Below are positions 5,177 to 20,018 of a stretch of 64,000 nucleotides of DNA, one piece after another (position 1 is the first letter of the stretch; each line of letters opens with the position of its first letter). A program made the position numbers and the translations under genes. The notes under the pieces were generated by a model. That model was not told where the DNA came from. It did no database searches and saw only the letters and a program-made list of their open reading frames with translations. Where the stretch lies: IMG/VR virus record IMGVR_UViG_3300032242_002454, positions 140,626 to 204,625 of that record; one strand, given 5' to 3'.

Positions 5177-5205
5177 TTGACAAGACGATAGGACTAGTGT
5201 ACAAT
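5177..5205 (+). promoter_or_regulatory. sigma70-type promoter
   Basis: TTGACA-N17-TACAAT, CGAT in spacer. Confidence 0.85.
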
Positions 5206-5241
5206 CACAGCATACACTTTGGAAACAAACTTGGAGTTGAA

Positions 5242-5952: not shown

Positions 5953-5954
5953 TT

Positions 5955-6080: not shown

Positions 6081-6327
6081 AACAATTTTCATTCCGTGTT
6101 CTTGTAAGAGTGAAATTTTAATGATCGAATATGATCATGAAATAGATATGGCTGATCTGGCAATATTTGAACATTATACAAATTATAGCAATAAGATGTC
6201 ATTATGGCAGAGACTACGATATTGTTTTCAGGTTTTGGTATATAAAAAACCCTATTCTGATCAGATGGTGCTAGACAAAAAACAATTAAAAGATTTGCAA
6301 AAATTCCTGAGTGGACTTAGCCTTTAA
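6049..6327 (+). CDS. hypothetical protein
   Basis: ORF in operon. Confidence 0.7.
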   Translation: MGSVTNLKENKTIFIPCSCKSEILMIEYDHEIDMADLAIFEHYTNYSNKMSLWQRLRYCFQVLVYKKPYSDQMVLDKKQLKDLQKFLSGLSL

Positions 6328-6372
6328 GGTGTATATTATAAGGTTTCCTAACTTATAACAGGGAGGCTAATT

Positions 6373-6588
6373 ATGGTCGTTAGAACAGCAGTAGAATTCA
6401 TGAATGATCAATTAGCTGATAGAGTGAAGGTCTTACAAAAAGCTTTAAACCAAGCAGAAAATATTATAACCACTCTAGAAAAAGAAAACAACAATCTAAA
6501 AGACGTTCTTAATAATCTAACGTCAGAAAATAAGGAAGATTATATGCTTAATAGCGAGGCTTTTAATGAGCCAGTGTTTACGGTCTAA
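6373..6588 (+). CDS. coiled-coil protein
   Basis: GGAGG RBS, heptads, GGTGTA at 6328. Confidence 0.7.
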   Translation: MVVRTAVEFMNDQLADRVKVLQKALNQAENIITTLEKENNNLKDVLNNLTSENKEDYMLNSEAFNEPVFTV

Positions 6589-6844
6589 AAATAAAAGAGT
6601 AATAACACAAATTGGTGAGAATGAATATTTGGTTGAAGGCGAAAGTGATTGGGCTAGATTTGGTTGTCAATCAGATATATCAATAATAACTTCCGCTAAT
6701 TTAGAAGGTGGCCCATTTTTATTAGTGGGCGATTCTTTTTTGGGTAAAGGTAAAATCTCAGCAATACAAAATATTGACAGTGGCAGAGATGGCTATATAA
6801 TAATCAAAGTTACCTTATTCTCTAAAAAGGAAAAACATGATTAA
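6566..6844 (+). CDS. hypothetical protein
   Basis: ORF in operon. Confidence 0.65.
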   Translation: MSQCLRSKNKRVITQIGENEYLVEGESDWARFGCQSDISIITSANLEGGPFLLVGDSFLGKGKISAIQNIDSGRDGYIIIKVTLFSKKEKHD

Positions 6845-6936
6845 TGAATTGATTCCTATGATCGGATTTAATCAAGCTATGTTAATAGCTGGATATAATG
6901 AATATCAAACTCAACAAATAATTAAAGGGTCTACTT

Positions 6937-7122
6937 ATGAGCCAACTTCACAAGAGTAATAAGAATAGAGTTTTATTTGGTGTTTGTGGAGGACTAGCAG
7001 AAAATCTAGGAGTAGATGCCGCCGTACTAAGAATAGGATTTGTTCTTGGAGCAATTTTTACTGGAAGTATTTTGTTTTGGGTTTACTTACTTTTTGCTTT
7101 AGTATTACCTACACAGGATTGA
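6937..7122 (+). CDS. pspC: PspC-domain membrane protein
   Basis: NRVLFGVCGGLAENLGVD...LR, TM, Y..ALVLP. Confidence 0.9.
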   Translation: MSQLHKSNKNRVLFGVCGGLAENLGVDAAVLRIGFVLGAIFTGSILFWVYLLFALVLPTQD

Positions 7123-7126
7123 TTCA

Positions 7127-7693
7127 ATGGACAGGATAGAAGGTGGTCAGAAAATTTTCTTTATCTCTGATCTTCACCTTGGACATAAAAATATCATAGG
7201 ATATTGTAATCGTCCATTCTCCACTGGAGAAGAAATGGATTCTCAAATTCTTTCTTCCATAAACGAAAAAGTCTCCCAAAACGATATTCTTTATGTTCTA
7301 GGAGATTTTTGCCATAAAGGTGGAGTTGCTCAATCTTATAGAGAAAGAATAGCTTGTGAAAATATTCATATGATTCTAGGTAATCATGATGAACCAACTA
7401 AATTTTCCACAGGATTTTCTAGTGTTGGCTATCAGAAAATGATTCTATATAAAAATCAAAAAATATTTATGTGTCACTATCCCATGCGAAGCTGGCCTAG
7501 TAGTCACAAAAAAAGCTGGATGCTTTATGGTCATGTTCATAGCAGATTCCATCGTGAGGACGTTGTTTCTGGTAGCCTCACGCTTGATGTAGGCGTGGAT
7601 AATAAAAGAGATGGGGTGACATTCGGTACTCCTTGGAGTTTTAAAGACGTTCAACAACAATTTCTGGCGAGAGCGAAAAATTTTTCAAGGTAG
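7127..7693 (+). CDS. calcineurin-like metallophosphoesterase
   Basis: DLH, GD, GNHD, CHYP, GHVH, DVGVD. Confidence 0.92.
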   Translation: MDRIEGGQKIFFISDLHLGHKNIIGYCNRPFSTGEEMDSQILSSINEKVSQNDILYVLGDFCHKGGVAQSYRERIACENIHMILGNHDEPTKFSTGFSSVGYQKMILYKNQKIFMCHYPMRSWPSSHKKSWMLYGHVHSRFHREDVVSGSLTLDVGVDNKRDGVTFGTPWSFKDVQQQFLARAKNFSR

Positions 7694-7697
7694 CCTG

Positions 7698-7726
7698 TTG
7701 ACAATGCCGATACCATACTGTACAAT
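7698..7726 (+). promoter_or_regulatory. sigma70-type promoter
   Basis: TTGACA-N17-TACAAT, GCCGAT in spacer. Confidence 0.85.
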
Positions 7727-7805
7727 CAAAGGAACAACGAGGGTAAGATCAGTCGCCTGACTGAGCCTGTCGTTGAAAGATTGGTTAAGAATTTGGAGGT
7801 TGATT

Positions 7806-8090
7806 ATGGCTGAAGTTACTACTACTGATAAGCAGACCCGTGTTCGTTGCAGTGATGATCAGTTTCTTGAGGCGGTTTTTAACAGCAGGACTTATGCTGA
7901 GATTGCTACTAAGACAGGTCAGAAGGTTGCTAGTACGATGGCTCGTTATGCTCGTACAAAGGCTGCTCTGGCTAAGAAGGGAATTGAACTTCCTGCTATG
8001 GAACGAGCAAAGCCTATTAAGACTATTGATAATGTCGAAGCTATGGCTGAGACAGTTCGCCGTCTAAAGGCTGCTCATTCTAACGGCTGA
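7806..8090 (+). CDS. small basic HTH-like DNA-binding protein
   Basis: GGAGG RBS; TYAEIATKTGQKVAST. Confidence 0.65.
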   Translation: MAEVTTTDKQTRVRCSDDQFLEAVFNSRTYAEIATKTGQKVASTMARYARTKAALAKKGIELPAMERAKPIKTIDNVEAMAETVRRLKAAHSNG

Positions 8091-8108
8091 GTTTAGTTCA
8101 AACCAAAT

Positions 8109-8192
8109 GCTTCCAACTACATCCCTCATAAATATTGTTAGAGACAACATAGACAAAATCTAACCAATCGTTATGATATGTAGCTTGGAAGT
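8109..8192 (+). ncRNA. putative structured RNA
   Basis: GCTTCCAACTACAT pairs with ATGTAGCTTGGAAGT; TCATAA/TTATGA; inner TAGA/TCTA hairpin. Confidence 0.45.
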
Positions 8193-8197
8193 ATAAT

Positions 8198-8270
8198 GGC
8201 CCAGTAACCCAATGGCAGAGGTAGCGGACTTAAAATCCGTCAAGTATCAGTTCGAGTCTGATCTGGGCCA
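8198..8270 (+). tRNA. tRNA-Leu(UAA), short variable loop
   Basis: GGCCCAG/CTGGGCC-A; anticodon arm GCGGA-CTTAAAA-TCCGT; T arm ATCAG-TTCGAGT-CTGAT. Confidence 0.92.
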
Positions 8271-8304
8271 CTTTAATGTGGTGTAAAAAGTAGACAAAAT
8301 ATAT

Positions 8305-8345
8305 CTATCTTGGTGTATGTAATTGTGGCACATACAAGGAGATAG
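8305..8345 (+). promoter_or_regulatory. RBS-sequestering hairpin containing GGTGTA
   Basis: CTATCT/AGATAG and TGTATGT/ACATACA stems cover AAGGAG. Confidence 0.75.
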
Positions 8346-8347
8346 TT

Positions 8348-8818
8348 ATGAAAAAATGTTTGAAATGCTCCAAAGAATTTAAGAACAGGGTTGTGATTGA
8401 TGGTGTTGAAAGGAATATACATAAAAGAAGTTATTGTTTAGAATGTTCCCCATTTGGAAAACGTAATACTAAAAGACTACATATTCCACCAAGAGATACG
8501 AATAGCACAAAACACTGTACAAAATGCAGTCGTAAGTTTAAATGGACAAAAAACAATGTATGTTCCACATGTAGGACATTTAAAAGAAGAAATAATCAAA
8601 GAATAAAGTCAATAGAATATCTTGGTGGTAAATGTACTGGCTGTGGAAATAAAGATCATGATGTTTTGACTTTTCACCATAAGAACCCTAAAAATAAAAA
8701 ATTTACCTTATGCCAAAGTTGGCACAGAGCTTGGAAAATACTTTTGTCAGAGATTAAAAAGTGCGAGCTACTTTGTGCTAATTGTCACATGAAACATCAC
8801 AGAAAAGAAATGCTATGA
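8348..8818 (+). CDS. free-standing HNH homing endonuclease with Zn fingers
   Basis: Multiple CxxC; LGGKC..C...FHHKNP...CELLCANCH. Confidence 0.88.
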   Translation: MKKCLKCSKEFKNRVVIDGVERNIHKRSYCLECSPFGKRNTKRLHIPPRDTNSTKHCTKCSRKFKWTKNNVCSTCRTFKRRNNQRIKSIEYLGGKCTGCGNKDHDVLTFHHKNPKNKKFTLCQSWHRAWKILLSEIKKCELLCANCHMKHHRKEML

Positions 8819-9036
8819 CATTCGACCACTGGCTAAATGAAATTGAAGGATATAGCGTTAGACACGAAAGAGCTATGACCGACATAAGAAACTGTGTTGC
8901 AAAAGGAGAAACTGACGATATAATTAAGTGGCTGATGGCAGCTTATGCTATGGGCCATGAACAGGGTTATGATGTTGGTCATTATGATGGTAAGAAAAAC
9001 TGCAAACAACATTTTGATGAATATGGATGGGTATAA
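8815..9036 (+). CDS. hypothetical protein
   Basis: ATGA-coupled ORF. Confidence 0.65.
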   Translation: MTFDHWLNEIEGYSVRHERAMTDIRNCVAKGETDDIIKWLMAAYAMGHEQGYDVGHYDGKKNCKQHFDEYGWV

Positions 9037-9038
9037 TT

Positions 9039-9251
9039 ATGGAAATCCACAACAAAAAACATATCACAATGACTCCTGACGATGTTAAAAAAGCTATTGA
9101 GAGATATATTGATGATGAAATCGTTAGTACTGAAACTGGTTGTGATATTAAGTTTATTGTACATGATATTTATCAGAAAGATAGTTTGACCGGATATTAT
9201 AAGTCAGAATTTGTTGGTGCTGAAGTTGTGGTGCGTCCTAATGAGAGCTGA
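9039..9251 (+). CDS. hypothetical protein
   Basis: ORF in operon. Confidence 0.6.
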   Translation: MEIHNKKHITMTPDDVKKAIERYIDDEIVSTETGCDIKFIVHDIYQKDSLTGYYKSEFVGAEVVVRPNES

Positions 9252-9474
9252 ATTTTTAATGGGCAAAGCATCTAAAGATAGCCCATATATTCCAAAAAGA
9301 GGAGAAACTATCCAGTATGATAGACTGGGTGATGGAACTTGGCTAACTATTCATGTTGGTGATGGTAAAACTCCAGTTAAAGATCTCCCTGCAATAGCTG
9401 ATTATGATATTCGTGAACGAGTTAGGATCTTGGAAGAAAAAATAGCAAAATTAGAAAATGATCGAAGAATATGA
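9241..9474 (+). CDS. hypothetical protein with hyaluronidase/tail-like GDG motif
   Basis: PKRGE...IHVGDGKTPVKDLP. Confidence 0.55.
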   Translation: MRAEFLMGKASKDSPYIPKRGETIQYDRLGDGTWLTIHVGDGKTPVKDLPAIADYDIRERVRILEEKIAKLENDRRI

Positions 9475-9757
9475 AAACTGGGAAGATAGTATAAGAAGAA
9501 CTTTTATAGAATTGGCAAATTATATGGAACAACATTCTAATCCTATTGAATATTTAATTGAATTTGCTTGGGCAAATGGTGCTGATCGTTTTGTTGTAAA
9601 TAATGCCAAGGATGAATTGAAAAAACTTCAAGAAAATAATATTGCTAATCCTGTTGCTTGGGCTAGAATAAATAAACGTGGGGATTTGTTTGATCCTCGT
9701 TTATGTAATAATATTCATGTTGATCAAAGTTCTGTGGTTCCACTATACAGGAAGTAA
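9458..9757 (+). CDS. hypothetical protein
   Basis: PVAW...VVPLY motif typical of phage early proteins. Confidence 0.65.
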   Translation: MIEEYENWEDSIRRTFIELANYMEQHSNPIEYLIEFAWANGADRFVVNNAKDELKKLQENNIANPVAWARINKRGDLFDPRLCNNIHVDQSSVVPLYRK

Positions 9758-9759
9758 AA

Positions 9760-10086
9760 ATGAGACCAAGAGGAAATAGATTGTGTCGAGCAGAAGTAAA
9801 AAATCATAATCCAAAATCTCCAATAGATACTTTTGTTCTTGTTACAGTAAGAGAATGTAATGATTGCGATGGAGGTACATACATTGATGAGATCAACACT
9901 GCTGCTCAATTTTTAGCAACTGAAAATGAATCATGTGATGAGCCTTTCTATCAGATTTATGGAAGAAGATACATGGACGATATAATGTCTGGTCCGATGT
10001 TTCTTGCAGAGTTTTATGACTTGGATAAAGCTCTCAATTTTCTATATTATTTAACTGGTGAAGAAGCCAAAGTTGTTTCTTACTAA
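9760..10086 (+). CDS. hypothetical protein
   Basis: ORF in operon. Confidence 0.65.
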   Translation: MRPRGNRLCRAEVKNHNPKSPIDTFVLVTVRECNDCDGGTYIDEINTAAQFLATENESCDEPFYQIYGRRYMDDIMSGPMFLAEFYDLDKALNFLYYLTGEEAKVVSY

Positions 10087-10087
10087 T

Positions 10088-10609
10088 ATGATTAATAGTA
10101 AATACAAAATTGATTTATCTGATTTTTATAGTGATGACGGTGGGTATTGTACACTATTTAAATTGCTTAATGAGCCATCACTAGGATTCAAAGAATTCAT
10201 TTCCAAATCTAGAGCAAAATATGCTAGGAGAATTCAGATAAGACTAAGTAAACTTAATCTTGCACCAAAAGTATATTCTAGAGTATGCAAGATGACTTAT
10301 AATGGATTTTTTCCGGGCAAAAAAAGTGGTTGGGGATATGTCACAGAATTAGCTAAAACTGGAAATAAAAAAGTTAGATTATGCAATATACAGAGATTGG
10401 TTGATGTTATTTACGATAGAACAAAATTAAAATTTTGGGACTGTCATTGGGCTAATCTTGGATATATTATAAGAAAAGGCAAAAGAAAATTGGTTTGTAT
10501 TGATACTGGTAAAGAAACTTGGGATGGTTATGCTAATTATTTTGGAAATATTGATCCTGGCCCAAAGTGTTCGTATTGTTTAAAATATAAATGTAGGTGT
10601 GTAGAATAA
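10088..10609 (+). CDS. minimal protein-kinase-like protein
   Basis: GFK, LAPKVY, catalytic-loop-like DCHWANLG, DFG-like IDTG. Confidence 0.65.
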   Translation: MINSKYKIDLSDFYSDDGGYCTLFKLLNEPSLGFKEFISKSRAKYARRIQIRLSKLNLAPKVYSRVCKMTYNGFFPGKKSGWGYVTELAKTGNKKVRLCNIQRLVDVIYDRTKLKFWDCHWANLGYIIRKGKRKLVCIDTGKETWDGYANYFGNIDPGPKCSYCLKYKCRCVE

Positions 10610-11496
10610 TGAAATATCTTATAGCTGGTGGTGCTGGTTTTATAGGTAGTCATATTGCAGATACTCTTTTAGATATGGGTCATGATGTTATAATTATTGA
10701 TAATCTATCTACAGGAAAAAAAAGTAACATACCTAATAGAGCTACTTTTGTAGAATTAGATATAGCTAAATCTCCTATAGAAATTTTATCATCTTTTTTT
10801 GATGGAGTAACCGCAGTATTCCATTGTGCCGCATTACCCAATGTTCAGTTTTCTATAGAACAACCTTTGGATTCTAATAAAGCTAATGTAGATACTACTA
10901 TTAAAATTTTAGAGTCTATGAGAATCAAAAAAATTAAGAAGATTATATACAGCAGTTCTTGTTCTATATATGGAGATGCTATACAGATACCTACTACTGA
11001 AAATGAAACTATTAAACCATTAAGCCCATACGCTTTACAGAAATATATTGGAGAAGAATACTGTTCCCTTTATTATAGGCTTTACAATATAGAATATGTT
11101 GCTTTGCGTTATTTTAATGTATATGGTGAACGAATGACTGATACTGGAGCTTATGTTAGTGTATTGAGTCACTTTTTAAGAGCTTACAAAAATAATCAGC
11201 CGTTAAATATTACTAATACTGGAGAACAAAAAAGAGATTTTGTATATGTAAAAGACATAGCCAAAGCAAATGTTTTGGCTGCATTAAAAAATATTGGTGG
11301 TGAAACTATATTAAACTTAGGATCAGGTAATAACTATTCTATAAATTCTATTGCTAGTTGGTTTAATCATAATATTGTTTATGGAGAATCTAGAATAGAA
11401 CCATTTGAAACTTTAGCTGACATAAATAAAGCTAAAAATATATTGAATTGGTTACCAAAAGTAAATTTAAAATCATGGGTAATGCAAAATATTTAA
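10609..11496 (+). CDS. NAD-dependent epimerase/dehydratase (GalE-like)
   Basis: GGAGFIG, YALQK, RYFNVYG, RDFVYV. Confidence 0.95.
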   Translation: MKYLIAGGAGFIGSHIADTLLDMGHDVIIIDNLSTGKKSNIPNRATFVELDIAKSPIEILSSFFDGVTAVFHCAALPNVQFSIEQPLDSNKANVDTTIKILESMRIKKIKKIIYSSSCSIYGDAIQIPTTENETIKPLSPYALQKYIGEEYCSLYYRLYNIEYVALRYFNVYGERMTDTGAYVSVLSHFLRAYKNNQPLNITNTGEQKRDFVYVKDIAKANVLAALKNIGGETILNLGSGNNYSINSIASWFNHNIVYGESRIEPFETLADINKAKNILNWLPKVNLKSWVMQNI

Positions 11497-11506
11497 GGAA
11501 ATTATA

Positions 11507-11857
11507 ATGCCATATATTAAAGAAGAAAATAGACTTACTCTTGATGAATGTATTGATCATATGGTGGTTTGTTTGAAAAATAGTGCTTTCAGAGCATCAT
11601 TTGATCCAAATAAAAATAATTATATGAAGGAAGAACTAAGTAATGAAGATGTTTTAGCTATAGTTGGAGATATTAATTACTGTATTTCTCGTGTTGTTTC
11701 TAAGCTAATGGGCAAGGTATCGTATTCTAAAATAGCAATGATTACAGGAGTATTAGAAAATATAAAGCAAGAGTTTTATCGTAGAATTGGTGTATCTTTA
11801 GAAGATAAGAAAATTATAGAAAATGGAGATATACCAGAATACAAAAGGTTATGCTAA
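11507..11857 (+). CDS. conserved phage hypothetical protein
   Basis: MPYIK...GDINY...EFYRR...ENGD. Confidence 0.75.
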   Translation: MPYIKEENRLTLDECIDHMVVCLKNSAFRASFDPNKNNYMKEELSNEDVLAIVGDINYCISRVVSKLMGKVSYSKIAMITGVLENIKQEFYRRIGVSLEDKKIIENGDIPEYKRLC

Positions 11858-12570
11858 AAAACACAAAAAAGAATGATTATTCATTAATCTCAAAAAAAGA
11901 ACTAGAAAAATTATTAAATGAAGGATTGAATTTTACAGAAATAGGTTCTCTTTATGGTAGAAATCTGCACTATATTAGAACGATATGTAAAAAATACAAT
12001 CTTAAAATTAAATCAAAGGCGACTGTCTGTTTAAACTGTCAAAAAAAGTTTAAGCATAAAGCAACCATCCCAGCCAAATACTGTTCCACAAAATGTCGAT
12101 CTGCACATTGGCCAAAAATAAATAAAGAAAAGCATAAAGAATTAGTTAAAAAATCTAGATTTAAGTGTCATCCAGTAAAATGCAGAAAATGTAACAATAA
12201 TATATCAGATAATAATAGAAAATCTGGTTTGGTTTACTGTAGTGATTTATGTAGAAAACAGAATAAGACGATATCTGATAAACAAAGTCGAGATAAAAAA
12301 TATAAACAATTTGGTCTTTACAAAATATCTATAGGATGTCAAAATTGCGGATATAATAAATGTTCTGGTTCTTTAGATTTTCATCATGTCAATCCACAAA
12401 CAAAATCGACTAGAATAAGCTGTGGACTCTGGAAAGCTAATACTGAAGTATTTCAAAAAGAACTGTTAAAATGTATATTACTATGTAAAAATTGTCATTA
12501 TGAAGCACATAATCAGATTCTTATTATAGAAGGAAATGAAGGACAATGGAATTGTATATACCAAAATTAA
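11851..12570 (+). CDS. free-standing HNH homing endonuclease
   Basis: HTH-like N-term, CxxC/CSxxC, GCQNCG...DFHHVNP...CILLCKNCH; same family as 8348. Confidence 0.88.
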   Translation: MLKNTKKNDYSLISKKELEKLLNEGLNFTEIGSLYGRNLHYIRTICKKYNLKIKSKATVCLNCQKKFKHKATIPAKYCSTKCRSAHWPKINKEKHKELVKKSRFKCHPVKCRKCNNNISDNNRKSGLVYCSDLCRKQNKTISDKQSRDKKYKQFGLYKISIGCQNCGYNKCSGSLDFHHVNPQTKSTRISCGLWKANTEVFQKELLKCILLCKNCHYEAHNQILIIEGNEGQWNCIYQN

Positions 12571-12580
12571 AGGTGTATAA

Positions 12581-12625
12581 ATTATTAAGAATGGCGATAT
12601 TAAAGAGTATAAACGCCTAAAATAA
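12581..12625 (+). pseudogene. displaced duplicate 3' end of gene 11507..11857
   Basis: Encodes IIKNGDIKEYKRLK* vs IIENGDIPEYKRLC* at 11813-11857. Confidence 0.85.
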
Positions 12626-12635
12626 AGAGGCCAAA

Positions 12636-12947
12636 ATGTCTAAAAATATTGATGATGTAATTAAAGAGGTAATGAAAAGCAATAAGGAGATTCATACTAT
12701 GGACGCTCATATCTCTAAAGACATTACCGATCTAAAAAAGAGCATCAAAAATATTGAGAATAAGATCAAAATGATAGATAATAAAATGGATCAAACCATA
12801 GATCTATTAAATACTTTCATTACTCTTATTACTGAACAGGATGATATAGATCTTGATGATGAAGAAGAGAATGAGGATTGGACTCCTTATGATCAACAAG
12901 AAGATTATCAAGCTGATGATGAAGATGAGGAAGAAGAACAATACTAA
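12636..12947 (+). CDS. coiled-coil protein with acidic tail
   Basis: GAGG RBS; GGTGTA at 12572. Confidence 0.75.
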   Translation: MSKNIDDVIKEVMKSNKEIHTMDAHISKDITDLKKSIKNIENKIKMIDNKMDQTIDLLNTFITLITEQDDIDLDDEEENEDWTPYDQQEDYQADDEDEEEEQY

Positions 12948-13198
12948 TGGCTAGTTTAGCTCTACTAGTAACAATAATTTTTTTATCTGTGCTAATAATA
13001 GGTCCAATTAGTTATATTCTATCATTATTTTCTTGGATGCCAAATTTAATCAAATGGATAATGGCAATAGTTTGTATTTTTGTTGGGGGTTGGGTTTGTT
13101 TTCTACCTATACCCTTTTTAAGAGCTTTGGGATTAATTGATATAGCAATAGGATTAAAGATCATATCGGATAGCACACAAAAGAAAAGTGATGCTTGA
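12947..13198 (+). CDS. multi-TM membrane protein
   Basis: Three hydrophobic segments. Confidence 0.7.
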   Translation: MASLALLVTIIFLSVLIIGPISYILSLFSWMPNLIKWIMAIVCIFVGGWVCFLPIPFLRALGLIDIAIGLKIISDSTQKKSDA

Positions 13199-13223
13199 CA
13201 AGACCGTATGCCGATGGTATACT
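13195..13223 (+). promoter_or_regulatory. sigma70-type promoter for rIIA
   Basis: TTGACA-N17-TATACT, GCCGAT in spacer. Confidence 0.88.
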
Positions 13224-13263
13224 TGAGCCATCACAGGAACGATAACACTTTTGGAGAATAAAG

Positions 13264-15954
13264 ATGAAGTTGGCAGATAGGACGATTGAGACTCACAGCG
13301 TTGGTGTTGCAAGTAGGAACCAATTCAATATCGCTCAGACGAGCAAGATGTTTAAAATCCTTTCAGACTCTCTTTATTCTGATAAGGTAATGGCAGCAAT
13401 TCGTGAGCTTTCTACTAATGCTTATGATAGTCATATCTCTGCTGGGAATAGGAATCCTTTTAAGGTTACTCTGCCCACCGCTGCTAATCCTACCTTTATG
13501 GTGAGAGATTATGGTACTGGTCTTAGTCAGGCCGATATGGAGGACTTGTATACAACTTATGGTGCCTCAAACAAAAATGATAGCAATGATTTTGTTGGTT
13601 GTCTTGGTCTAGGGTCTAAGAGTCCGTTTGCCTACACCAAGAGCTTCACCACTGCATCATATTACAATGGTAAGAAATATACCTATATTGCAGCAATTGA
13701 TGAGAGTGGTGTTCCTACTCTGAATCTTTTTAATACTGCCGAAACATCTGAGCCTAATGGTCTTGAGATTAGTTTTGCTGTTAAGCAGCATGACTTTCAA
13801 GAGTTCACCGATAAGGCTAAGAGAATTTTCCACTACTTCCGAATGAAACCCATCATTGAGGGTGGTGTTGGTGGTAATCTTATGGATCATAAGTATAGCA
13901 ATACCAATATCGTTATTAGTGGTGAGGGTTGGAGAGTTTGCCGACTCAATAATGATAACAGTTATTTTCCCAGCAATTATCATCGAATTGATAGTGGTAT
14001 CATCGCTATCATGGGAAATATTGCGTATCCTGTTCAAACCGCACAGATTGTTGGTCAAGAAAAGGAAGAAATGCCCGACCATATTCAGAAGTGGAATAGG
14101 GCTTTCCAGAAAGCAGATATTGATTCTTGGAAGAGTTTTGTGGGAGAGATTCTTAACTCTGGTCTTTATCTTGAACTGGATTTTGGTATCGGTGAACTTG
14201 AGATGGACGTTAGCCGCGAAGGTTTGCAGTATACCAAGGATGTAATTAAGGCTCTTCGTAAAAAGACCCAAGAAATTTACATGGAGATGAAGGAAGAATT
14301 CTCCAAGAAAATTCAAGCATCCAAGACCAAGGTAGAAGCAATTACTTCATATTATACTATGAATGAATTGGCTGGCGGCTGGGGTGTTGGTGCCACTTGG
14401 ACTGATCCCAAGGGTAAAGATCATCCGATCAATTCTGGAAATGATTTGGAATATAAAATTCCGGCTGGCAAGAGTCTGTATGTTTTTAACTATAAGACTG
14501 CTGGCTATCGTTCTCGTCGTCAAGTTGCTTTGACAGATAAGATTCATCACGAAACTCTTACTGGTAAAGGTTCTTACTATTGGAATAACCAGAGGAAGAA
14601 AGGCACGATGGCTTTCTTTATCTGTGACGTTAAGGGTGAAGAAACAGCAAAGAAGATCATCACAAAGTATTGCAATAGTAATGATTGTTTTGCCTACTTG
14701 ATGCTTGATACTAAGGACTATACCAAGAGTGGAGAAGGTTTTGATAAGCTGATCGAAGATGTTGGATCTGAAAATCTGCTCAAGGTTTCAGACTACAAAC
14801 ATCTTACTCAAAGTTCTGGCCCAAGAAAGTCTTACAATAGAAATTCTAATGGTAGTGTTAGTGATCAAGACGTATTCTTTATTCATGGCTATGATGATGA
14901 TAGTAAGCAGATTACTAATCCTTATAACGATGCTACTTGTCTAAGAATTCTTTCAGAAGAACAACTGGAAGATTTTCTAGAGCAGGATGAGATAGTGTAC
15001 GTTCCTATGCTTCGATATAAGACTGAGGCTGAATCCGGTCATCCTGAGATTAGTGATATTACCACTACTCTTGGTGATGATAGCTTGAAGTTTATAGTCA
15101 AGGATTTGCTGGGAGATAGTAAGATTTATGCTATCAAAAACGCTTTTGTTAAAAAGCTTCAAAATGATGGGTATAATCTTGTCAGTTTTAATGAATTCTT
15201 TAAGCGTCAGTTGAAGATTGTTGCTCAGAAACATTTTTCAAGTTTGGCTTCTTTCAATGATCTTGTTGAGTTCTGTAAGAAAGAATATGCAAGCGAAGAA
15301 CATAAGAACAACCAATATAGATATTATAATCATGGAACTATGGATAAACAGTTCATGTTTCATATGTTGAATATCTTTGGGTTGAATTATGAAAAGTTTA
15401 TTGGTAGTAAGACTCTGGTTGAGTGCATAGACACTACTATGCTTATGGAATTCTTTGCTAATACTGTTCATGATAATAACTTTAGGATTGAAAGATTTTC
15501 TCAATCAGATTATTTCTCTCATATCTCAAGGTTAATGGACAAGGTTAATATCCGATCAGTAGACAGTAAAGATATTCGTAAGGCTAGTTTGGCTTACAAT
15601 GTCTTGACTAGTCTGATTAGTGGATCACTTTATACTGGATCTAATTCTCATAAAGCTGAAACTTATCTGAAAATTATTAAGGGTGAGTCTAAGGAAAACT
15701 TTAAACTACCAGCAATCTCTAAGATTAGAGAGAGTGTCAGAACTGAACTTGATAAGAACCCTATGCTAAAGTATATTCTTGGTAGTCATCAAGTTACTGG
15801 AACTCTTACTGATCTAAGAGCTAAGAAGAATCCTATTAATCAGCTTGATGAACGTCATTCCTATTATAATAATGATGGTAAGGATTGGATCATGCAGATG
15901 AGCCAAGAGAATATTGACCTATTTAGAATTCAGTTGAGTAGTTTAGTCAAGTAG
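13264..15954 (+). CDS. rIIA: rIIA-like protein (N-terminal GHKL ATPase)
   Basis: LYSDK..AIRELSTNAYDSH, VRDYGTG, GLGSKSPFAY, SREGL; followed by rIIB. Confidence 0.92.
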   Translation: MKLADRTIETHSVGVASRNQFNIAQTSKMFKILSDSLYSDKVMAAIRELSTNAYDSHISAGNRNPFKVTLPTAANPTFMVRDYGTGLSQADMEDLYTTYGASNKNDSNDFVGCLGLGSKSPFAYTKSFTTASYYNGKKYTYIAAIDESGVPTLNLFNTAETSEPNGLEISFAVKQHDFQEFTDKAKRIFHYFRMKPIIEGGVGGNLMDHKYSNTNIVISGEGWRVCRLNNDNSYFPSNYHRIDSGIIAIMGNIAYPVQTAQIVGQEKEEMPDHIQKWNRAFQKADIDSWKSFVGEILNSGLYLELDFGIGELEMDVSREGLQYTKDVIKALRKKTQEIYMEMKEEFSKKIQASKTKVEAITSYYTMNELAGGWGVGATWTDPKGKDHPINSGNDLEYKIPAGKSLYVFNYKTAGYRSRRQVALTDKIHHETLTGKGSYYWNNQRKKGTMAFFICDVKGEETAKKIITKYCNSNDCFAYLMLDTKDYTKSGEGFDKLIEDVGSENLLKVSDYKHLTQSSGPRKSYNRNSNGSVSDQDVFFIHGYDDDSKQITNPYNDATCLRILSEEQLEDFLEQDEIVYVPMLRYKTEAESGHPEISDITTTLGDDSLKFIVKDLLGDSKIYAIKNAFVKKLQNDGYNLVSFNEFFKRQLKIVAQKHFSSLASFNDLVEFCKKEYASEEHKNNQYRYYNHGTMDKQFMFHMLNIFGLNYEKFIGSKTLVECIDTTMLMEFFANTVHDNNFRIERFSQSDYFSHISRLMDKVNIRSVDSKDIRKASLAYNVLTSLISGSLYTGSNSHKAETYLKIIKGESKENFKLPAISKIRESVRTELDKNPMLKYILGSHQVTGTLTDLRAKKNPINQLDERHSYYNNDGKDWIMQMSQENIDLFRIQLSSLVK

Positions 15955-15975
15955 TCAGAAATTTCTCAAGACCCC

Positions 15976-16003
15976 TTGACAAGCTTGCCGATTAGTGTAA
16001 AAT
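15976..16003 (+). promoter_or_regulatory. sigma70-type promoter for rIIB
   Basis: TTGACA-N16-TAAAAT, GCCGAT in spacer. Confidence 0.8.
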
Positions 16004-16047
16004 GAGAGTATCACAGGTATCGTAACTAAAAACTAGGAGTTTGGATT

Positions 16048-16941
16048 ATGGCTGTTCCGTTTATGTTTGTGGATGGTAATTTGACGCTGGTTCTTAATAA
16101 TCAGAGTTATCAGGTGTTGCCAGATCATATCAACTATAAGTTGATTCTGGAAAGACTTCCATCTGCTACGGCAGATGAACTACTGGAAGTTGTTGATGTT
16201 CAAAAGGCTGTTGCTACTTTTAGCGATGGTCTTGTGGAGATCAAGAATGGACAGGTTCTCTACGAGGGTGAGGAAGTTCATGGTAGTATCAGTAAGCGTA
16301 TTCTGGAGTTTATGAGTAAGGGATTGCCTTTTCAACCCCTTGTTAATTTCCTGAATAATCTCATGGAAAATCCAAGTATGCAGAGTCAAAAGGAGTTGTA
16401 TGACTTCTTGGAACATGAACATCTTCCCATTACTGAGGATGGTTTCTTCCTCGCTTATAAGGCTGTTCGTTCAGACTTTAAGGATAAGTATAGGGGAGTT
16501 TTTGACAATAGAGTTGGTAAGGTCTGTGAAATGCAAAGAGCAAAGGTTGATGATGATCGTGGTCGTGGTTGCTCTAATGGACTTCATGCTGGTGCATTGA
16601 ATTATGTTGCCAACTATGGAAGTCTTGAGTCTGGAGACAAGATTGTTATTGTCAAGATTAATCCCAAGGATGTTGTGAGCGTTCCTAGTGACTGCAATTA
16701 TGAAAAGCTTCGCACTTGTCGCTATGAAGTAGTTGGACAGTATGAGGGTGAATTGCTCAAGCCTCTCTACAAGGCCGATTTTAGTCAGGATGATTACGAG
16801 GACGATGAGGATGATTATCTGAATGACTATGATGAGAGCTATTGGGATCAGTTTGATGATGAAGATGAAGATGAGGACGATGATCTTGTTGGTGATGAAG
16901 ATGATTCAGATTTTGATAATGGACTCTACGGAACTCATTGA
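16048..16941 (+). CDS. rIIB: rIIB-like protein with acidic tail
   Basis: LYDFL..LPITEDG.FLAYKAV, CSNGLH, VKINPKDVVSVP, RTCRYEV. Confidence 0.92.
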   Translation: MAVPFMFVDGNLTLVLNNQSYQVLPDHINYKLILERLPSATADELLEVVDVQKAVATFSDGLVEIKNGQVLYEGEEVHGSISKRILEFMSKGLPFQPLVNFLNNLMENPSMQSQKELYDFLEHEHLPITEDGFFLAYKAVRSDFKDKYRGVFDNRVGKVCEMQRAKVDDDRGRGCSNGLHAGALNYVANYGSLESGDKIVIVKINPKDVVSVPSDCNYEKLRTCRYEVVGQYEGELLKPLYKADFSQDDYEDDEDDYLNDYDESYWDQFDDEDEDEDDDLVGDEDDSDFDNGLYGTH

Positions 16942-16954
16942 AATTAATTAGTTA

Positions 16955-17036
16955 AGGTGGTGTTTGGTAACTTGTAAGGTAGCACCTATATAGTTTCTGC
17001 TATCGTGCAATAACGGTTCGATTCCGTTACCATCTT
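16955..17036 (+). ncRNA. tRNA-like RNA with non-canonical anticodon arm
   Basis: AGGTGGT/ACCATCT stem, GTT-TGGT-AAC mini D arm, 12-bp arm with 13-nt loop, T arm AACGG-TTCGATT-CCGTT. Confidence 0.7.
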
Positions 17037-17114
17037 TTAGATATTGCTCTTGATAATGATGTTCATTATCCCAATATCAAAAATGTAGGTAGGAAGTTGG
17101 AAAAAGGAAAACAA

Positions 17115-18275
17115 ATGTTTAGTGATACTTTGGCTTTTAATCCATTCGATAAGACTCATAGTGCTATTGGAACAAGAGATCAAATTACTTTGAGGAATAA
17201 GTTTTTTGATTCTTTTGGTGGTCAGCAGATTTTCTGTTACAACGGTGATCCTCGTAAGAAGATCAGTAGTATGAATCATACGGATCATCTTACCACTGTT
17301 GCTATTGCTAATGATAGTCAAGGTGCTGATGCTTACTTCTATGTTAATGGTGGACGTAAACAATATGCTATTAGTAGAATTCGTGCTTGTTTTGTTGATA
17401 TGGATGCTGGGCGAGATGATCAGGGTAGCTATTTAAAGCCTAGCATTGTTATGCAAAAGAAGCGGGAGTTCTTAAATAAGATCAATAACTTTCCAGTAAA
17501 ACCAAGCTGGGTTGTTGATACTCGTAATGGCTATCAGTGCTATTGGATTCTAAACCAAAACAATATAAATCCTCACAAGACTTATTGGAATGGTATTCAA
17601 AAGAAACTTGTGAACCATTTTGGTGGTGATGCCAGAGCTATCAAAATCAATCAGATTTATAGAATCCCTTATACTTGGTGGAGGAAGGGTTGGGAAGGAA
17701 AGCAACCTTATTTTACCAGTATTTTGTCGGGATCGACTGGTGACTGGGTAAATATTGAACAACTTAAAGAAGCTCTTGATGGCGTTTCTGCTGTGGTCAA
17801 TGTTATTGCAAATAAGACTAGTGATGAATGGTTTAAGGAATATGCTAAGGCTTATAAGAGGTCTGATGTTACTGGAGTTCCAGTATCAGTCAATGTTGCT
17901 GCAACTATTGCTGATCAGATGAAGTCTCTTAACCTTAAGAACAGCACTGTATTCTGTAATACATATACCAATAGTACAGATGATATCAAGAATAAGTATG
18001 TATATTCTGGTCATGGTGTTTTCAATAAGGCTTATGGTGATCCTACTCCAGTATCTCCTGTGGTTGAGGACGATACAGATTCTCTTGAGACGCTTCCTGC
18101 TGACGCTGGGGGCGAGGATTTAGATCTTGACGGTTCCCAGACCAAGCTTTTAAAGACGGTTGTGGAGTTCCTTAATCAAGTCTCAACGCCGCTCTACTTT
18201 AGCAACAATAGATTCTTGTCTAACTCTGCTAAAGACCTTGCTTCTCAAATTAGTGACAAGTTTTGTATAGGGTGA
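17115..18275 (+). CDS. RepB'-type (AEP superfamily) primase-domain protein
   Basis: FVDMD, PSWVVDTRNGYQCYW, IYRIP. Confidence 0.75.
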   Translation: MFSDTLAFNPFDKTHSAIGTRDQITLRNKFFDSFGGQQIFCYNGDPRKKISSMNHTDHLTTVAIANDSQGADAYFYVNGGRKQYAISRIRACFVDMDAGRDDQGSYLKPSIVMQKKREFLNKINNFPVKPSWVVDTRNGYQCYWILNQNNINPHKTYWNGIQKKLVNHFGGDARAIKINQIYRIPYTWWRKGWEGKQPYFTSILSGSTGDWVNIEQLKEALDGVSAVVNVIANKTSDEWFKEYAKAYKRSDVTGVPVSVNVAATIADQMKSLNLKNSTVFCNTYTNSTDDIKNKYVYSGHGVFNKAYGDPTPVSPVVEDDTDSLETLPADAGGEDLDLDGSQTKLLKTVVEFLNQVSTPLYFSNNRFLSNSAKDLASQISDKFCIG

Positions 18276-18282
18276 GGGTTTT

Positions 18283-18696
18283 ATGGGACAACAAGATGAA
18301 GATTACAACTACGATGATGACTATGAAGATAGTCAGGATAATTTAGACAGTCAGCATAAAAATTATTTCAAGTTTGATCCTAGTGCATGGGATGCTTGGG
18401 GTAAAATGCTATACGAAGCTCTAAATGACATAGTTGAATATCCTTCTAATGTTTGGTATATTGGACATGGATTCGATAAAGGTTCGTTACCTGTGAATGA
18501 TTACTTCTCCAAATCAGGGAACTTTAAAAACTCCCTGTTTTTGGGGAACAATCATTATAAAGAACCAGTCTATAAAACCAAATACTTTATACATAACAAG
18601 TTAGATGTGGCGTATAGAAATCACTTAGTATCACACGCGGTTCATTTTCTTTCGCAACCAAACTATTATATGGGTATGTTCGACATACTTAATTAG
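18283..18696 (+). CDS. hypothetical protein
   Basis: GAGG RBS. Confidence 0.7.
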   Translation: MGQQDEDYNYDDDYEDSQDNLDSQHKNYFKFDPSAWDAWGKMLYEALNDIVEYPSNVWYIGHGFDKGSLPVNDYFSKSGNFKNSLFLGNNHYKEPVYKTKYFIHNKLDVAYRNHLVSHAVHFLSQPNYYMGMFDILN

Positions 18697-18705
18697 AGGA
18701 CAAGG

Positions 18706-18957
18706 ATGTTACCAGCAGCACTATTGTATGTGGCTATGTTCTTCAGTTCATTAACTGAAACTCCTTTTGTTGCATATGATCTAGCAACTCATATGAGCAA
18801 AGCACAAAGAGTAGAATGGACAAAAATGACAGATGATGATAATAATGTTAGGTTCACTATTACATTTTATAAGATGCCTATATTGGCAGAGCTAGGTTTT
18901 GAAAGAACTTTTGTGGATAAACACAATAACTGTCAAACGGAGCTTAATAAAAAATAA
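18706..18957 (+). CDS. hypothetical protein with signal-like N-terminus
   Basis: Hydrophobic N-term. Confidence 0.6.
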   Translation: MLPAALLYVAMFFSSLTETPFVAYDLATHMSKAQRVEWTKMTDDDNNVRFTITFYKMPILAELGFERTFVDKHNNCQTELNKK

Positions 18958-19193
18958 TGAACACATATTTTGAAATTTATTTTAATGAATCATCAGTCAG
19001 CAAAGTGTGCGACGCAATGGCTGAAGTTATAATCTTTATTGAAAATTGCACCAATCAAGATAGACGCATACCTGTCAAGATAGTAGAAAAAGATAAGAAA
19101 ACAGATAGGATCGTAGTGGTGTACAAACCCGTCCTGTCTGCTAAACTGGAATGGGTCAGCATCCCAAAGTACGAAGGGGAAACAATAGTATAA
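18957..19193 (+). CDS. hypothetical protein
   Basis: TAATG-coupled. Confidence 0.6.
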   Translation: MNTYFEIYFNESSVSKVCDAMAEVIIFIENCTNQDRRIPVKIVEKDKKTDRIVVVYKPVLSAKLEWVSIPKYEGETIV

Positions 19194-19627
19194 TGAAGAA
19201 CGAAAAATGGTTTTTTATAAGTAACTTTGAAGAATTTGTTGACCACTCAAGAGCTTTAGTTTTTAATTTATTTGGACAAGTTAATGAGATAGCCGCAGAT
19301 TCTTTAACTGCTTCTTTATCAACAATGAGTAAAGAAGAAATAGAAGAAATGGATACTACTCTTAGTCATGAAGAAGCGTCAGTTATAGTAAAGAATCATG
19401 CTAGAAAACAAATCAATAGAAATACTAAAGAAATTAGATATTCATTGACAGATAAAATTTTAGAAGAAATTATTGAAGATCTGAATGGAAGAATGGTTAG
19501 TAATATTTTGAATACCTTGGTTAACAAGGGAGTTTTGGATAGTGGATACGACAGTGAAAAAAACGATTTCATTTTTTGGGTGAAAGAAGATGCCAACAAT
19601 CAAAAAGAAACTCCTGAGACCGATTGA
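19193..19627 (+). CDS. hypothetical protein, paralog family A
   Basis: LNTLVNKGVLDSGYDSEKNDFIFW. Confidence 0.75.
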   Translation: MKNEKWFFISNFEEFVDHSRALVFNLFGQVNEIAADSLTASLSTMSKEEIEEMDTTLSHEEASVIVKNHARKQINRNTKEIRYSLTDKILEEIIEDLNGRMVSNILNTLVNKGVLDSGYDSEKNDFIFWVKEDANNQKETPETD

Positions 19628-20018
19628 TCAAGATATTCATTTCAAATATAGATGTTATGAATGTTCTTTAGATCATTGGTTATCAATTAGGGAAACTCAA
19701 ACAAAGGGTTTTAAAATAGTATGTGATTGTGGACAAATCCTAAAGGTAAAACTTATAGAAAAAATTGAGATAGTTTATCAGAAAGTTATCAAGAAAGAAA
19801 TTCCTCCTGAGCCAGATAAGCCAGAAGAATTACCAAAAAAATCAGAAACTATTCCAATAGATTTACTGTCACAATGTTGTACAATATTACTTGGTTATGG
19901 GTTTGATATTACTGAAGGTGAAGACTTAATAGTATCAACTTTTAATGAAAACCCTACTTATATTTGTGTAGATTTAATAAAACAAGCTTTGAAAAAATTT
20001 GGAGAAAAGAATGGCTAA
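19590..20018 (+). CDS. Zn-ribbon protein with RuvA C-terminal (domain III)-like domain
   Basis: CYEC...CDCG; Pro/Glu linker; ILLGYGF...DLIKQALKK; abuts ruvB. Confidence 0.65.
   Translation: MPTIKKKLLRPIDQDIHFKYRCYECSLDHWLSIRETQTKGFKIVCDCGQILKVKLIEKIEIVYQKVIKKEIPPEPDKPEELPKKSETIPIDLLSQCCTILLGYGFDITEGEDLIVSTFNENPTYICVDLIKQALKKFGEKNG

What the first reader, a model, noticed from the sequence alone, without database searches (positions are those of the whole stretch)
16955..17036. Unannotated tRNA-shaped RNA with an intact elbow but a long non-anticodon arm
Seen: between rIIB and the primase lie a 7-bp acceptor-like stem (AGGTGGT/ACCATCT, G3.U70 wobble), a tiny D arm GTT-TGGT-AAC carrying the GG, and a perfect T arm AACGG-TTCGATT-CCGTT. 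The anticodon arm is replaced by a 12-bp interrupted stem (TTGTA/TGCAA + GGTAGCA/TGCTATC) with a 13-nt loop. Known: G3.U70 is the AlaRS determinant, and the tmRNA tRNA-like domain also has a reduced D arm and a long helix in this position. Inference: a tRNA mimic (mini-TLD, or decoy for anticodon nucleases, tRNA sensors or SmpB), or an RNase P/Z processing signal. A1-U72 and U73 argue against efficient alanylation.
Basis: partly seen in the sequence, partly recalled or inferred. Interest (0 to 1): 0.75.

Follow-up and report, generated by a model that had tools for sequence, protein, structure and literature searches.

The report
Conserved tRNA-shaped RNA after phage rIIB
Just after the rIIB gene, an abundant group of uncultured freshwater jumbo phages carries a conserved RNA that keeps the top half and elbow of a tRNA but has no anticodon; it belongs to no described family, and it is most likely a handle for the host's tRNA-processing enzymes rather than a decoder or a small tmRNA.

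Summary
The element is found once per genome in 79 of 79 evaluable relatives, 7-13 nt after the stop codon of rIIB or of a gene inserted after it. All four helices covary.

It is not a decayed tRNA. No relative has a normal tRNA at this place. More distant rIIB phages have a plain hairpin, with a T-run in two of three cultured relatives, or nothing.

The family has several classes. All share:
- a closing acceptor stem that starts with A's and is followed by a T-run;
- a 3-4 bp D hairpin with a UGGU-type loop;
- an invariant GGTTCGATTCC T-loop.

The "anticodon arm" is hypervariable (about 8 to 41 nt between D arm and T arm) and is missing in one class. That argues against an anticodon-nuclease decoy. 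The G.U pair depends on the register chosen and is not conserved, which argues against AlaRS or tmRNA-like charging. The phage also has a separate true tmRNA.

No promoter precedes the element. In some relatives the next gene's ATG lies 13-28 nt behind it, so the element is probably transcribed with rIIB.

My best reading, which is inferred, is a tRNA-like punctuation and 3'-end module read by RNase P and the 3'-end enzymes. It may release a stable tRNA mimic. It is a new family; Rfam and ARAGORN find nothing here.

The parts
16954..17037 (+). Whole tRNA-like structure (TLS) with its closing pairs; the covariance-model match runs 16952-17039
   Evidence: Model R1 scores 104.5 bits here, and this is the only strong match in the window. 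It is also the only one in the 204,625-bp genome judged by the T-loop motif.
16955..16961 (+). 5' strand of the acceptor-like closing stem (pairs with 17029-17035). A16954-T17036 adds a pair. T16961 may instead be a one-base linker.
   Evidence: Acceptor pairs covary: 6 of 8 pairs change on both sides family-wide. 91% of positions pair in 35 distinct cores, against a mean of 68% and a maximum of 78% in 1000 permutations.
16962..16971 (+). Mini D arm: 3-bp stem GTT/AAC with loop TGGT carrying the GG
   Evidence: The stem covaries between classes: GTT/AAC, GTC/GAC and CCG/CGG. All 3 pairs change on both sides. The GG is invariant.
16972..17010 (+). Variable middle arm (5+7 bp, 13-nt loop 16985-16997, CCTATATAGTTTC) in the anticodon-arm position
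   Evidence: It covaries within class A. Other classes have a different arm or none; the stretch between D arm and T arm is 8 to 41 nt. There is no consistent anticodon. A loose motif CT..TRG(T/C)T recurs.
17012..17028 (+). T arm: 5-bp stem and invariant loop TTCGATT. T17011-A17029 is a likely sixth pair.
   Evidence: GGTTCGAT(T)C is invariant across 38 sequences. Four of the 5 stem pairs change on both sides. The sixth pair covaries U-A/C-G.
17029..17038 (+). 3' strand of the closing stem, running into a T-run (TCTTTT)
   Evidence: A T-rich run follows the stem in every class. The 5' strand always starts with A's that can pair with it.
15976..16003 (+). Sigma-70-like promoter (TTGACA-16-TAAAAT) ahead of rIIB; the likely origin of the transcript that carries the TLS
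   Evidence: Consensus scan, 11 of 12 matches. No such site lies between it and the TLS on the + strand. The real tRNA genes at 1127 and 8198 each have their own promoter.
16048..16941 (+). rIIB gene; its stop codon TGA lies 12-13 nt before the TLS
   Evidence: PHROG rIIB at E 1.5e-71. The spacing from stop codon to TLS is 7-13 nt in 45 of 49 distinct loci.

Best explanation
The element is a structured RNA made as the tail of the early rIIB transcript. It mimics only the 'top half' of a tRNA: the acceptor/T-arm stack plus the D-loop/T-loop elbow.

Shown:
- The fold is conserved by covariation.
- The elbow nucleotides are invariant.
- The arm in the anticodon position is dispensable.
- There is one copy per genome, fixed behind rIIB.
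- No promoter of its own was found, and a T-run follows it.

Inferred:
- The host enzymes that read exactly this top half treat it as a pre-tRNA. These are RNase P at the 5' side, and RNase E/Z or exonucleases in the U-rich trailer, perhaps followed by the CCA-adding enzyme.
- The element would then act as tRNA-type punctuation. It would cut the rIIB message free from the downstream cistron or define its 3' end.
- The closing stem plus U-tract may also act as a leaky terminator.
- Processing would release a stable 57-92-nt tRNA-like RNA whose own role, if any, is unknown.
For: 1. Real and selected. Covariation is seen in all four helices. The element is present in 79 of 79 evaluable loci of the clade and once per genome in 5 complete relatives; the weak extra hits checked there were ordinary tRNAs.
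2. The conservation pattern matches what RNase P, RNase Z and CCA-adding enzymes recognise, by established knowledge of tRNA end-maturation. The T-loop, the D-loop GG and the acceptor/T stack of 12-14 bp are kept, while the middle arm varies from none to about 41 nt.
3. Co-transcription. No sigma-70-like promoter lies before the TLS, whereas rIIA, rIIB and the true tRNAs each have one. The TLS starts 7-13 nt after the upstream stop codon. In classes B and C the next ATG lies only 13-28 nt after it, which leaves no room for a promoter. One lake metatranscriptome contig spans the rIIB 3' end and the whole TLS (16750-17048).
4. Position. More distant rIIB phages carry a simple hairpin, with or without a T-run, at this place (Xoo-sp13, PA5oct, LR756511, L315). 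It is therefore the transcript-end slot of the rII unit.
5. The A-rich start and U-rich end of the closing stem, unlike this phage's true tRNAs, fit a stem that doubles as a terminator base or trailer.
Against: - There is no direct RNA evidence. The available data were assembled contigs at depth about 5 with no read ends, and DNA carry-over cannot be excluded. No cleavage site, discrete species or CCA tail has been seen.
- A plain punctuation or terminator role does not obviously require an invariant T-loop sequence.
- The stack length varies from 12 to 14 bp and many closing stems have a mismatch near the bottom, which may weaken RNase P recognition.
- The host is unknown.
- The recurring middle-part motif CT..TRG(T/C)T is not explained by this model.
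Confidence: 0.42

Rival explanations
1. The processed RNA is the product that matters. It would be a trans-acting tRNA mimic that occupies or titrates a host factor reading the acceptor end or elbow. Candidates are a tRNA-targeting defence toxin acting on the acceptor/CCA end, a tRNA-modifying or processing enzyme, or a selenocysteine-pathway protein (given the Sec-like D arm). Its place in the rIIB 3' UTR would only give it early expression.
For: - The invariant elbow and one strictly kept copy per genome suggest selection on the RNA itself.
- The mini D arm with a 4-nt UGGU loop and the 13-bp stack resemble tRNA-Sec. The Rfam best hit is tRNA-Sec, and the class-B D-arm pattern pulls out bacterial tRNA-Sec genes.
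- T4 makes a stable RNA, rnaC, of still unknown role (PMC3014915, PMC9697503). Its 3' part scores 19.8 bits on model R1, above the T4 tRNAs at 15.2 or less.
Against: - No partner has been identified.
- The phage encodes no Ro60, SmpB, CCA-adding enzyme, SelA or SelB.
- Classes B and A2 give no tRNA-Sec hit, and there is no UCA loop or variable arm.
- Metatranscriptome contigs show no high abundance, although small RNAs are usually lost in such libraries.
- This reading is not exclusive of the best explanation.
Confidence: 0.25
2. It is only a branched intrinsic terminator or attenuator, or a 3'-end protector, for the rII early transcript. The closing stem and U-tract would do the work, and the tRNA shape would be a historical remnant of a captured tRNA.
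For: - A GC-rich upper closing stem (GTGG/CCAC type) followed by a T-run occurs in every class, with an upstream A-run.
- Distant relatives have ordinary hairpins, with or without a T-run, at the same place.
- Canonical terminators are not enriched in this early region: 9 found against 7.0 expected.
Against: - A remnant would not keep an invariant T-loop, the D-loop GG and a covarying 3-bp D stem across classes whose other parts have been replaced.
- Genes starting 13-28 nt downstream with no promoter space argue against efficient termination.
- The consensus terminator scan flags only the T arm, not a canonical terminator.
Confidence: 0.13
3. It is a mini tmRNA-like domain or alanine-accepting mimic. 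AlaRS would charge it through G3.U70, and it would enter stalled ribosomes with SmpB.
For: - The window copy has G.U at 3:70 in one register, G2-C71, a reduced D arm and a long helix where the tmRNA TLD has P2.
- Non-Watson-Crick pairs are frequent at that position: G.U 7 and mismatches 8 of 35 cores.
Against: - 20 of 35 cores have A-U or G-C at that position.
- Within class A the pair drifts to A-U and G-C.
- The register is uncertain.
- There is no reading frame, no Rfam tmRNA match at the window TLS and no phage SmpB.
- The phage already has a full tmRNA with G3.U70.
Confidence: 0.04
4. It is a decoy for anticodon nucleases or other anticodon-loop sensors.
For: Phages are known to counter tRNA-cleaving defences with their own tRNAs (background literature retrieved). 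The 13-nt loop is well conserved within class A.
Against: The arm is the least conserved part of the family: different stems, loops of 5 to about 25 nt, or no arm at all. No consistent anticodon-like heptaloop exists.
Confidence: 0.03
5. It is a decaying tRNA pseudogene with no function.
For: tRNA detectors fail on it.
Against: Compensatory changes occur in all helices. It is present in 79 of 79 loci. No relative has an intact tRNA at the site.
Confidence: 0.02

Closest known systems
Phage T4 rnaC (species 1 RNA), a stable small RNA of unknown role
   Same: Both are phage-encoded and non-decoding. The 3' part of rnaC offers an 8-bp closing stem, a T arm with GGUUCGAAUCC and a long hairpin in the anticodon-arm position. 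It is the best match of model R1 in the T4 tRNA region: 19.8 bits, against 15.2 or less for the T4 tRNAs. Its role is still unknown (PMC3014915, PMC9697503).
   Different: The similarity is weak and structural only. rnaC is 139 nt with a large 5' domain and lies in the tRNA cluster, not behind rIIB. Its MFE fold uses the closing-stem bases differently. Homology is not shown.
Bacterial tRNA-Sec (Rfam RF01852)
   Same: Both have a D arm with a 4-nt YGGU loop. The class-B stretch GAGTCTGGYGAC also occurs in the D arm of many bacterial tRNA-Sec genes. Class A has a 13-bp acceptor+T stack. tRNA-Sec is the best Rfam hit.
   Different: The score is 19.3 bits against a cut-off of 47. The D stem is 3-4 bp, not 6. 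There is no UCA anticodon loop and no long variable arm. Classes B and A2 give no hit. The phage has no Sec genes.
tRNA-like domain of tmRNA, including the reduced mitochondrial forms
   Same: Both have an acceptor stem, a T arm, a reduced D region with GG, and a helix replacing the anticodon arm.
   Different: The G3.U70 pair is not conserved. There is no mRNA-like part. The TLS D region is a hairpin. The window TLS gives no significant Rfam tmRNA match; a 17-nt T-loop fragment of a class-B relative scores 14.5 bits. A true tmRNA lies elsewhere in the same phage.
tRNA punctuation and mascRNA-type processing signals (mitochondrial transcripts; MALAT1/NEAT1)
   Same: A tRNA-shaped element without decoding function sits at the end of, or between, messages, where RNase P/Z cleavage defines RNA ends. 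This is what the TLS most plausibly works like.
   Different: Those systems are eukaryotic or organellar. No cleavage has been shown here. I found no described case in a dsDNA phage early operon.
Recently described bacterial tRNA mimics (skipping-rope/RCd1, DUF2693-FD, salivarius-1) and YrlA Y RNAs
   Same: [quoted passage not shown]
   Different: Those families have different connectivity and sequence. Rfam 15 gives no such match here. YrlA needs Ro60, which this phage lacks.

Membership tests
Canonical tRNA (RF00005) | Recognised by tRNA detectors or the covariance model at the family threshold | tested here: not met
   ARAGORN finds none at this site. Rfam gathering finds none. In E-value mode the best clan hit is tRNA-Sec at 19.3 bits.
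Canonical tRNA (RF00005) | 5-bp anticodon stem with a 7-nt loop carrying an anticodon | tested here: not met
   The window copy has a 12-bp arm with a 13-nt loop. Other classes have loops of 5 to about 25 nt, or no arm.
Canonical tRNA (RF00005) | Acceptor stem, T arm with GTTCRANYC loop, and D-loop GG (elbow) | tested here: met
tmRNA tRNA-like domain | Conserved G3.U70 (alanine identity) | tested here: not met
   G.U occurs in only 7 of 35 distinct cores; A-U in 16, G-C in 4, mismatches in 8. The pair drifts within class A.
tmRNA tRNA-like domain | Linked mRNA-like domain with a tag reading frame, and a match to the tmRNA model | tested here: not met
   There is no room for a frame in 57-92 nt. 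The window TLS gives no significant Rfam tmRNA match; a 17-nt T-loop fragment of a class-B relative scores 14.5 bits. A true tmRNA lies at 1415-1767.
tmRNA tRNA-like domain | Charging by AlaRS and binding by SmpB | not testable with these tools
   The phage has no SmpB gene. Host factors are unknown.
tRNA-Sec (RF01852) | Score at or above the gathering cut-off (47 bits) | tested here: not met
   19.3 bits. Classes B and A2 give no hit.
tRNA-Sec (RF01852) | 6-bp D stem with 4-nt loop, UCA anticodon, long variable arm, 13-bp acceptor+T stack | tested here: not met
   Only the 4-nt D loop, and in class A the 13-bp stack, are present.
Intrinsic (rho-independent) terminator | GC-rich stem directly followed by a U-tract | tested here: inconclusive
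   Closing stem plus T-run occurs in all classes. But the 'loop' is a 3- or 4-way junction, the scan flags only the T arm, and downstream genes start 13-28 nt later in some loci.
RNase P/Z-processed tRNA-like punctuation element | Acceptor/T stack of about 12 bp with an intact elbow inside a longer transcript | tested here: met
   The stack is 12-14 bp. The elbow bases are invariant. No promoter of its own was found. One contig spans rIIB and the TLS.
RNase P/Z-processed tRNA-like punctuation element | Cleavage at the 5' and 3' borders, giving a discrete product | not testable with these tools
   Only assembled metatranscriptome contigs were available.
YrlA / Y RNA tRNA mimics | Partner Ro60 (TROVE) protein and a permuted tRNA-like module | tested here: not met
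   The genome has no TROVE gene. The 5' and 3' ends lie in the acceptor stem. There is no Rfam hit.
RNase P-processed phage antisense RNAs (C4/CI type) | Loops complementary to a target in the phage's own transcripts | tested here: not met
   The 204-kb genome holds no complement of the 13-nt loop beyond the element itself; the best others have 1-2 mismatches inside genes. There is no Rfam C4 hit.

The most novel reading that the evidence does not exclude
RNase P releases the element from the early rII transcript as a free 'top-half' tRNA mimic, which then works in trans. It would occupy a host protein that reads the tRNA acceptor end or elbow, for example an anti-phage toxin that modifies or cuts tRNA acceptor ends, or a protein that recognises the tRNA-Sec-type D arm. 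That would make it an RNA-based counter-defence or hijacking factor of a new kind, and possibly a functional cousin of the long-unexplained T4 rnaC.
Probability: 0.15. Interest if true: 0.85.

Novelty: new variant of a known kind. Interest (0 to 1): 0.62.

Why it matters
tRNA-shaped RNAs that do not decode are known from plant RNA viruses, tmRNA, Y RNAs, mascRNA and a few bacterial families. The roles of the stable small RNAs that T4 makes beside its tRNAs are still unknown decades after their discovery.

This element is a clean natural experiment. In a very abundant lake phage clade the acceptor/T stack and elbow are kept nucleotide for nucleotide, while everything below the elbow is swapped or deleted. 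The clade's size is shown by 355 IMG/VR contigs and thousands of rIIB relatives. That pattern shows which part of the tRNA is being read.

The element also gives a compact substrate of 57-92 nt for testing whether bacterial RNase P, RNase Z or CCA-adding enzymes are used to punctuate phage mRNAs, or whether phages deploy top-half tRNA mimics against the host. In addition, standard tRNA and Rfam annotation miss this class entirely.

Tried and rejected
- A nucleotide search of cultured phages with 16000-18300 found nothing. The closest cultured rIIB proteins are about 41% identical.
It was dropped in favour of rIIB-anchored loci and a class-B pattern.
- Antisense-target idea: the genome has no complement of the loop.
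- Partner-protein ideas: no TROVE, SmpB, CCA-adding enzyme, SelA or SelB in the phage.
- Extra copies: the weak R1 hits checked in complete relatives are ordinary tRNAs.
- An anticodon reading of the loops (CUA or CUG in class B) is not consistent across classes, and the insert geometry is not a bulge-helix-bulge intron. Rejected.
- An in-frame TAG after the rIIB TGA appears in class C but not in the window. Judged a coincidence.
- The conserved downstream stretch 17040-17078 travels with the next gene, not with the TLS.
- Metatranscriptomes: only assembled contigs at low depth. The depth peak at 16854-16884 is a low-complexity acidic-repeat stretch, not the TLS.
- Literature searches found no description of such an element.
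- My automated extraction mis-set the 5' end for many class-B variants. Only the correctly framed rows were used.

Full report
**What is there.**
The window is the last 64 kb of a complete 204,625-bp uncultured phage genome with direct terminal repeats. Lake-water RNA runs hold parts of the region. The + strand's minimum-energy fold is the proposed cloverleaf:
- a 7-bp closing stem, with an eighth possible pair A16954-T17036;
- a 3-bp D hairpin with loop TGGT;
- an interrupted 12-bp arm with a 13-nt loop;
- a T arm with the canonical TTCGATT loop.

On its own the fold is only modestly better than shuffles (z -2.2), and the reverse strand is worse. ARAGORN finds tRNA-Ile and tRNA-Leu elsewhere in the window but nothing here. 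Rfam at gathering thresholds finds those two tRNAs and a full tmRNA at 1415-1767, and nothing here. The best sub-threshold match is tRNA-Sec at 19.3 bits.

**Neighbours.**
Upstream lie rIIA (13264-15954) and rIIB (16048-16941), both with strong PHROG matches. The downstream gene (ATG 17115 to 18275) has only a weak polymerase/primase-like hit, so 'primase' is unproven. The region is an early-type block, with many near-consensus sigma-70 promoters on the + strand. One sits directly ahead of rIIA (13195), one ahead of rIIB (15976), and one ahead of each true tRNA gene. None precedes the element.

**It is a family, not an accident.**
The rIIB protein retrieves 355 IMG/VR contigs, and the 80 kept are at least 85% identical. 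The exact T arm plus 3' strand occurs in 55 contigs. A covariance model built from 28 distinct class-A sequences (R1) finds the element in 79 of 80 rIIB loci. The eightieth locus ends 61 nt after rIIB.
- Five complete relatives have one strong hit each. The weak extra hits that were checked are ordinary tRNAs.
- The window's own genome has one copy.
- Within class A, 97.2% of cells pair and 11 of 28 pairs change on both sides. No shuffle of 500 reaches this, and slid controls collapse to 36-63%.
- RNAalifold independently recovers the middle arm and a 6-bp T stem.
- On a model-fitted alignment of all classes, 98.2% pair and 22 of 28 pairs change on both sides. The fitting biases this figure upward.
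- In my own anchor-based tabulation of 35 distinct cores, the acceptor pairs at 91%, against 68% (maximum 78%) for permuted partners. T-stem positions 1-3 show two to five pair types. The D stem switches between GTT/AAC, GTC/GAC and CCG/CGG.

**Classes.**
Relatives with nearly identical rIIB carry very different versions.
- Class A is the window type.
- Class A2 has a continuous 12-13-bp arm.
- Class B has a 4-bp D stem (AGTC/GACT), a 5-6-bp stem, an internal loop and a nested covarying hairpin. It also has deletion forms with 5-nt or 3-nt loops.
- Class D has a short irregular middle part.
- Class C has no middle arm at all, only a 13-nt linker, and totals about 57-62 nt.

All classes keep four things: the closing stem, which is A-rich at its 5' start; the mini D hairpin with GG; the invariant GGTTCGAT(T)C; and a T-run after the 3' strand. 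So selection acts on the top half and elbow, not on the anticodon side. A loose motif, CT..TRG(T/C)T, recurs in the middle part and remains unexplained.

**Origin and limits of the family.**
No relative has an ordinary tRNA at the site. rIIB relatives at 48-54% identity lack the element (L313-L315), and so do cultured relatives at about 41%. At the same place they carry:
- a plain hairpin, with a T-run in Xoo-sp13 and PA5oct and without a clear one in LR756511 and L315;
- repeats (Mwe-JY26, L313);
- or an overlapping gene (L314).

The element is therefore an innovation of one abundant freshwater clade, sitting in the slot where the rII transcript normally ends.

**Context and transcription.**
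The element starts 7-13 nt after the upstream stop codon in 45 of 49 distinct loci. The next ATG follows after 77-83 nt when the next gene is the MFSD... gene, which has its own conserved hairpin in between. It follows after only 13-28 nt when the next gene is MHED.../MHEP.../MSKK.... In the latter cases there is no room for a promoter, so transcription must pass through the element.

In some genomes an extra gene lies between rIIB and the element. One example is an HNH-like gene whose stop codon falls inside the D arm (L301). Another is a 210-aa ORF in L072-L078.

Lake-water metatranscriptome assemblies contain the region at low depth, and one contig spans the rIIB 3' end and the whole element. 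These are contigs without read ends, and DNA carry-over cannot be excluded. This is weak evidence for co-transcription and gives no evidence on processing.

- *AlaRS/tmRNA-like.* The G.U pair is 3:70 only in one register. Covariation of T17011-A17029 suggests a 7+6 arrangement, which would make it 4:69. It drifts to A-U and G-C within class A. Family-wide it is G.U in 7 of 35 cores. The phage has a separate tmRNA with its own G3.U70 and no SmpB.
- *Anticodon-nuclease decoy.* This is contradicted by the hypervariable or absent arm.
- *RNase P/Z signal.* This fits the conservation pattern best but is untested.
- *Decayed tRNA.* This is excluded by the covariation.

**Other leads.**
- The class-B D arm plus T-loop pattern, searched in bacterial genomes, pulls out tRNA-Sec genes. 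Class A has a 13-bp stack like tRNA-Sec. However, there is no UCA loop, no variable arm, no Rfam support in other classes and no Sec genes in the phage. This remains a structural resemblance only.
- In T4, model R1 scores the 3' part of rnaC (species 1 RNA) above the T4 tRNAs (19.8 against 15.2 bits or less). The role of rnaC is still unknown (PMC3014915, PMC9697503). The resemblance is weak, and the rnaC MFE fold uses those bases differently.
- No complementary target of the loop exists in the phage genome.
- No paper describing such an element was found. [quoted passage not shown]

**Verdict.**
This is a new, strongly supported family of phage tRNA-like structures. Its mechanism is inferred, not shown. 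Most likely it is a tRNA-type punctuation and 3'-end module of the rII early transcript, read by host tRNA end-processing enzymes. Its closing stem and U-tract may act as a leaky terminator, and a released stable tRNA mimic may have a function of its own.

Noticed in passing
window 1415-1767 (+): The phage encodes a full-length tmRNA (Rfam 88.6 bits) with a G3.U70 acceptor and no encoded CCA. ARAGORN did not call it, and the genome has no SmpB gene.
   Followed up: partly
window 17040-17078 (+), and the same place in many loci: A conserved nested hairpin lies upstream of the next gene (outer GATATTG/CAATATC, inner GATAAT/ATTATC). It covaries between relatives (for example ATATCG/CGATAT, GACGGT/ACTGTC) and travels with the MFSD... 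gene, not with the TLS. It may be a 5'-UTR operator or promoter-region structure.
   Followed up: partly
window 1-20000, + strand (e.g. 762-790, 6774-6801, 13195-13223, 15976-16003): Perfect or near-perfect sigma-70 consensus promoters are dense here, all on the + strand, while canonical terminators are not enriched (9 found, 7.0 expected). This looks like an early gene block read by host polymerase.
   Followed up: no
L301:610-1233 (also L285); L072:4881-5513 (L072-L078 group): Extra ORFs are inserted between rIIB and the TLS. One is an HNH/HTH-like probable homing endonuclease whose stop codon lies inside the TLS D arm. The other is a 210-aa ORF with no Pfam hit that ends 3 nt before the TLS.
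   Followed up: partly
own genome G000:C1:116962-117048 (outside the window): ARAGORN calls a tRNA-Ser with anticodon ACT (A at the wobble position), which is unusual. It lies in a cluster of eight tRNA genes at 112982-117600.
   Followed up: no
window 16854-16884: Metatranscriptome depth peaks here (up to about 1600). It comes from many 31-33-nt contigs matching the GAT/GAA acidic-repeat tail of rIIB. This is a low-complexity artefact and not expression of the TLS.
   Followed up: yes
L426:1909-2047 (-), phage T4 rnaC: The 3' part of T4 species 1 RNA can be drawn with an 8-bp closing stem, a T arm and a long hairpin. It matches the TLS model better than the T4 tRNAs do. An alternative local hairpin competes for the same bases.
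   Followed up: partly
L115:3901-3962: This class-C element (no middle arm) carries the class-A T arm and 3' strand (AACGG.., ACCATCT), with a matching 5' strand AGATGGT. That suggests recombination or modular exchange between classes.
   Followed up: no
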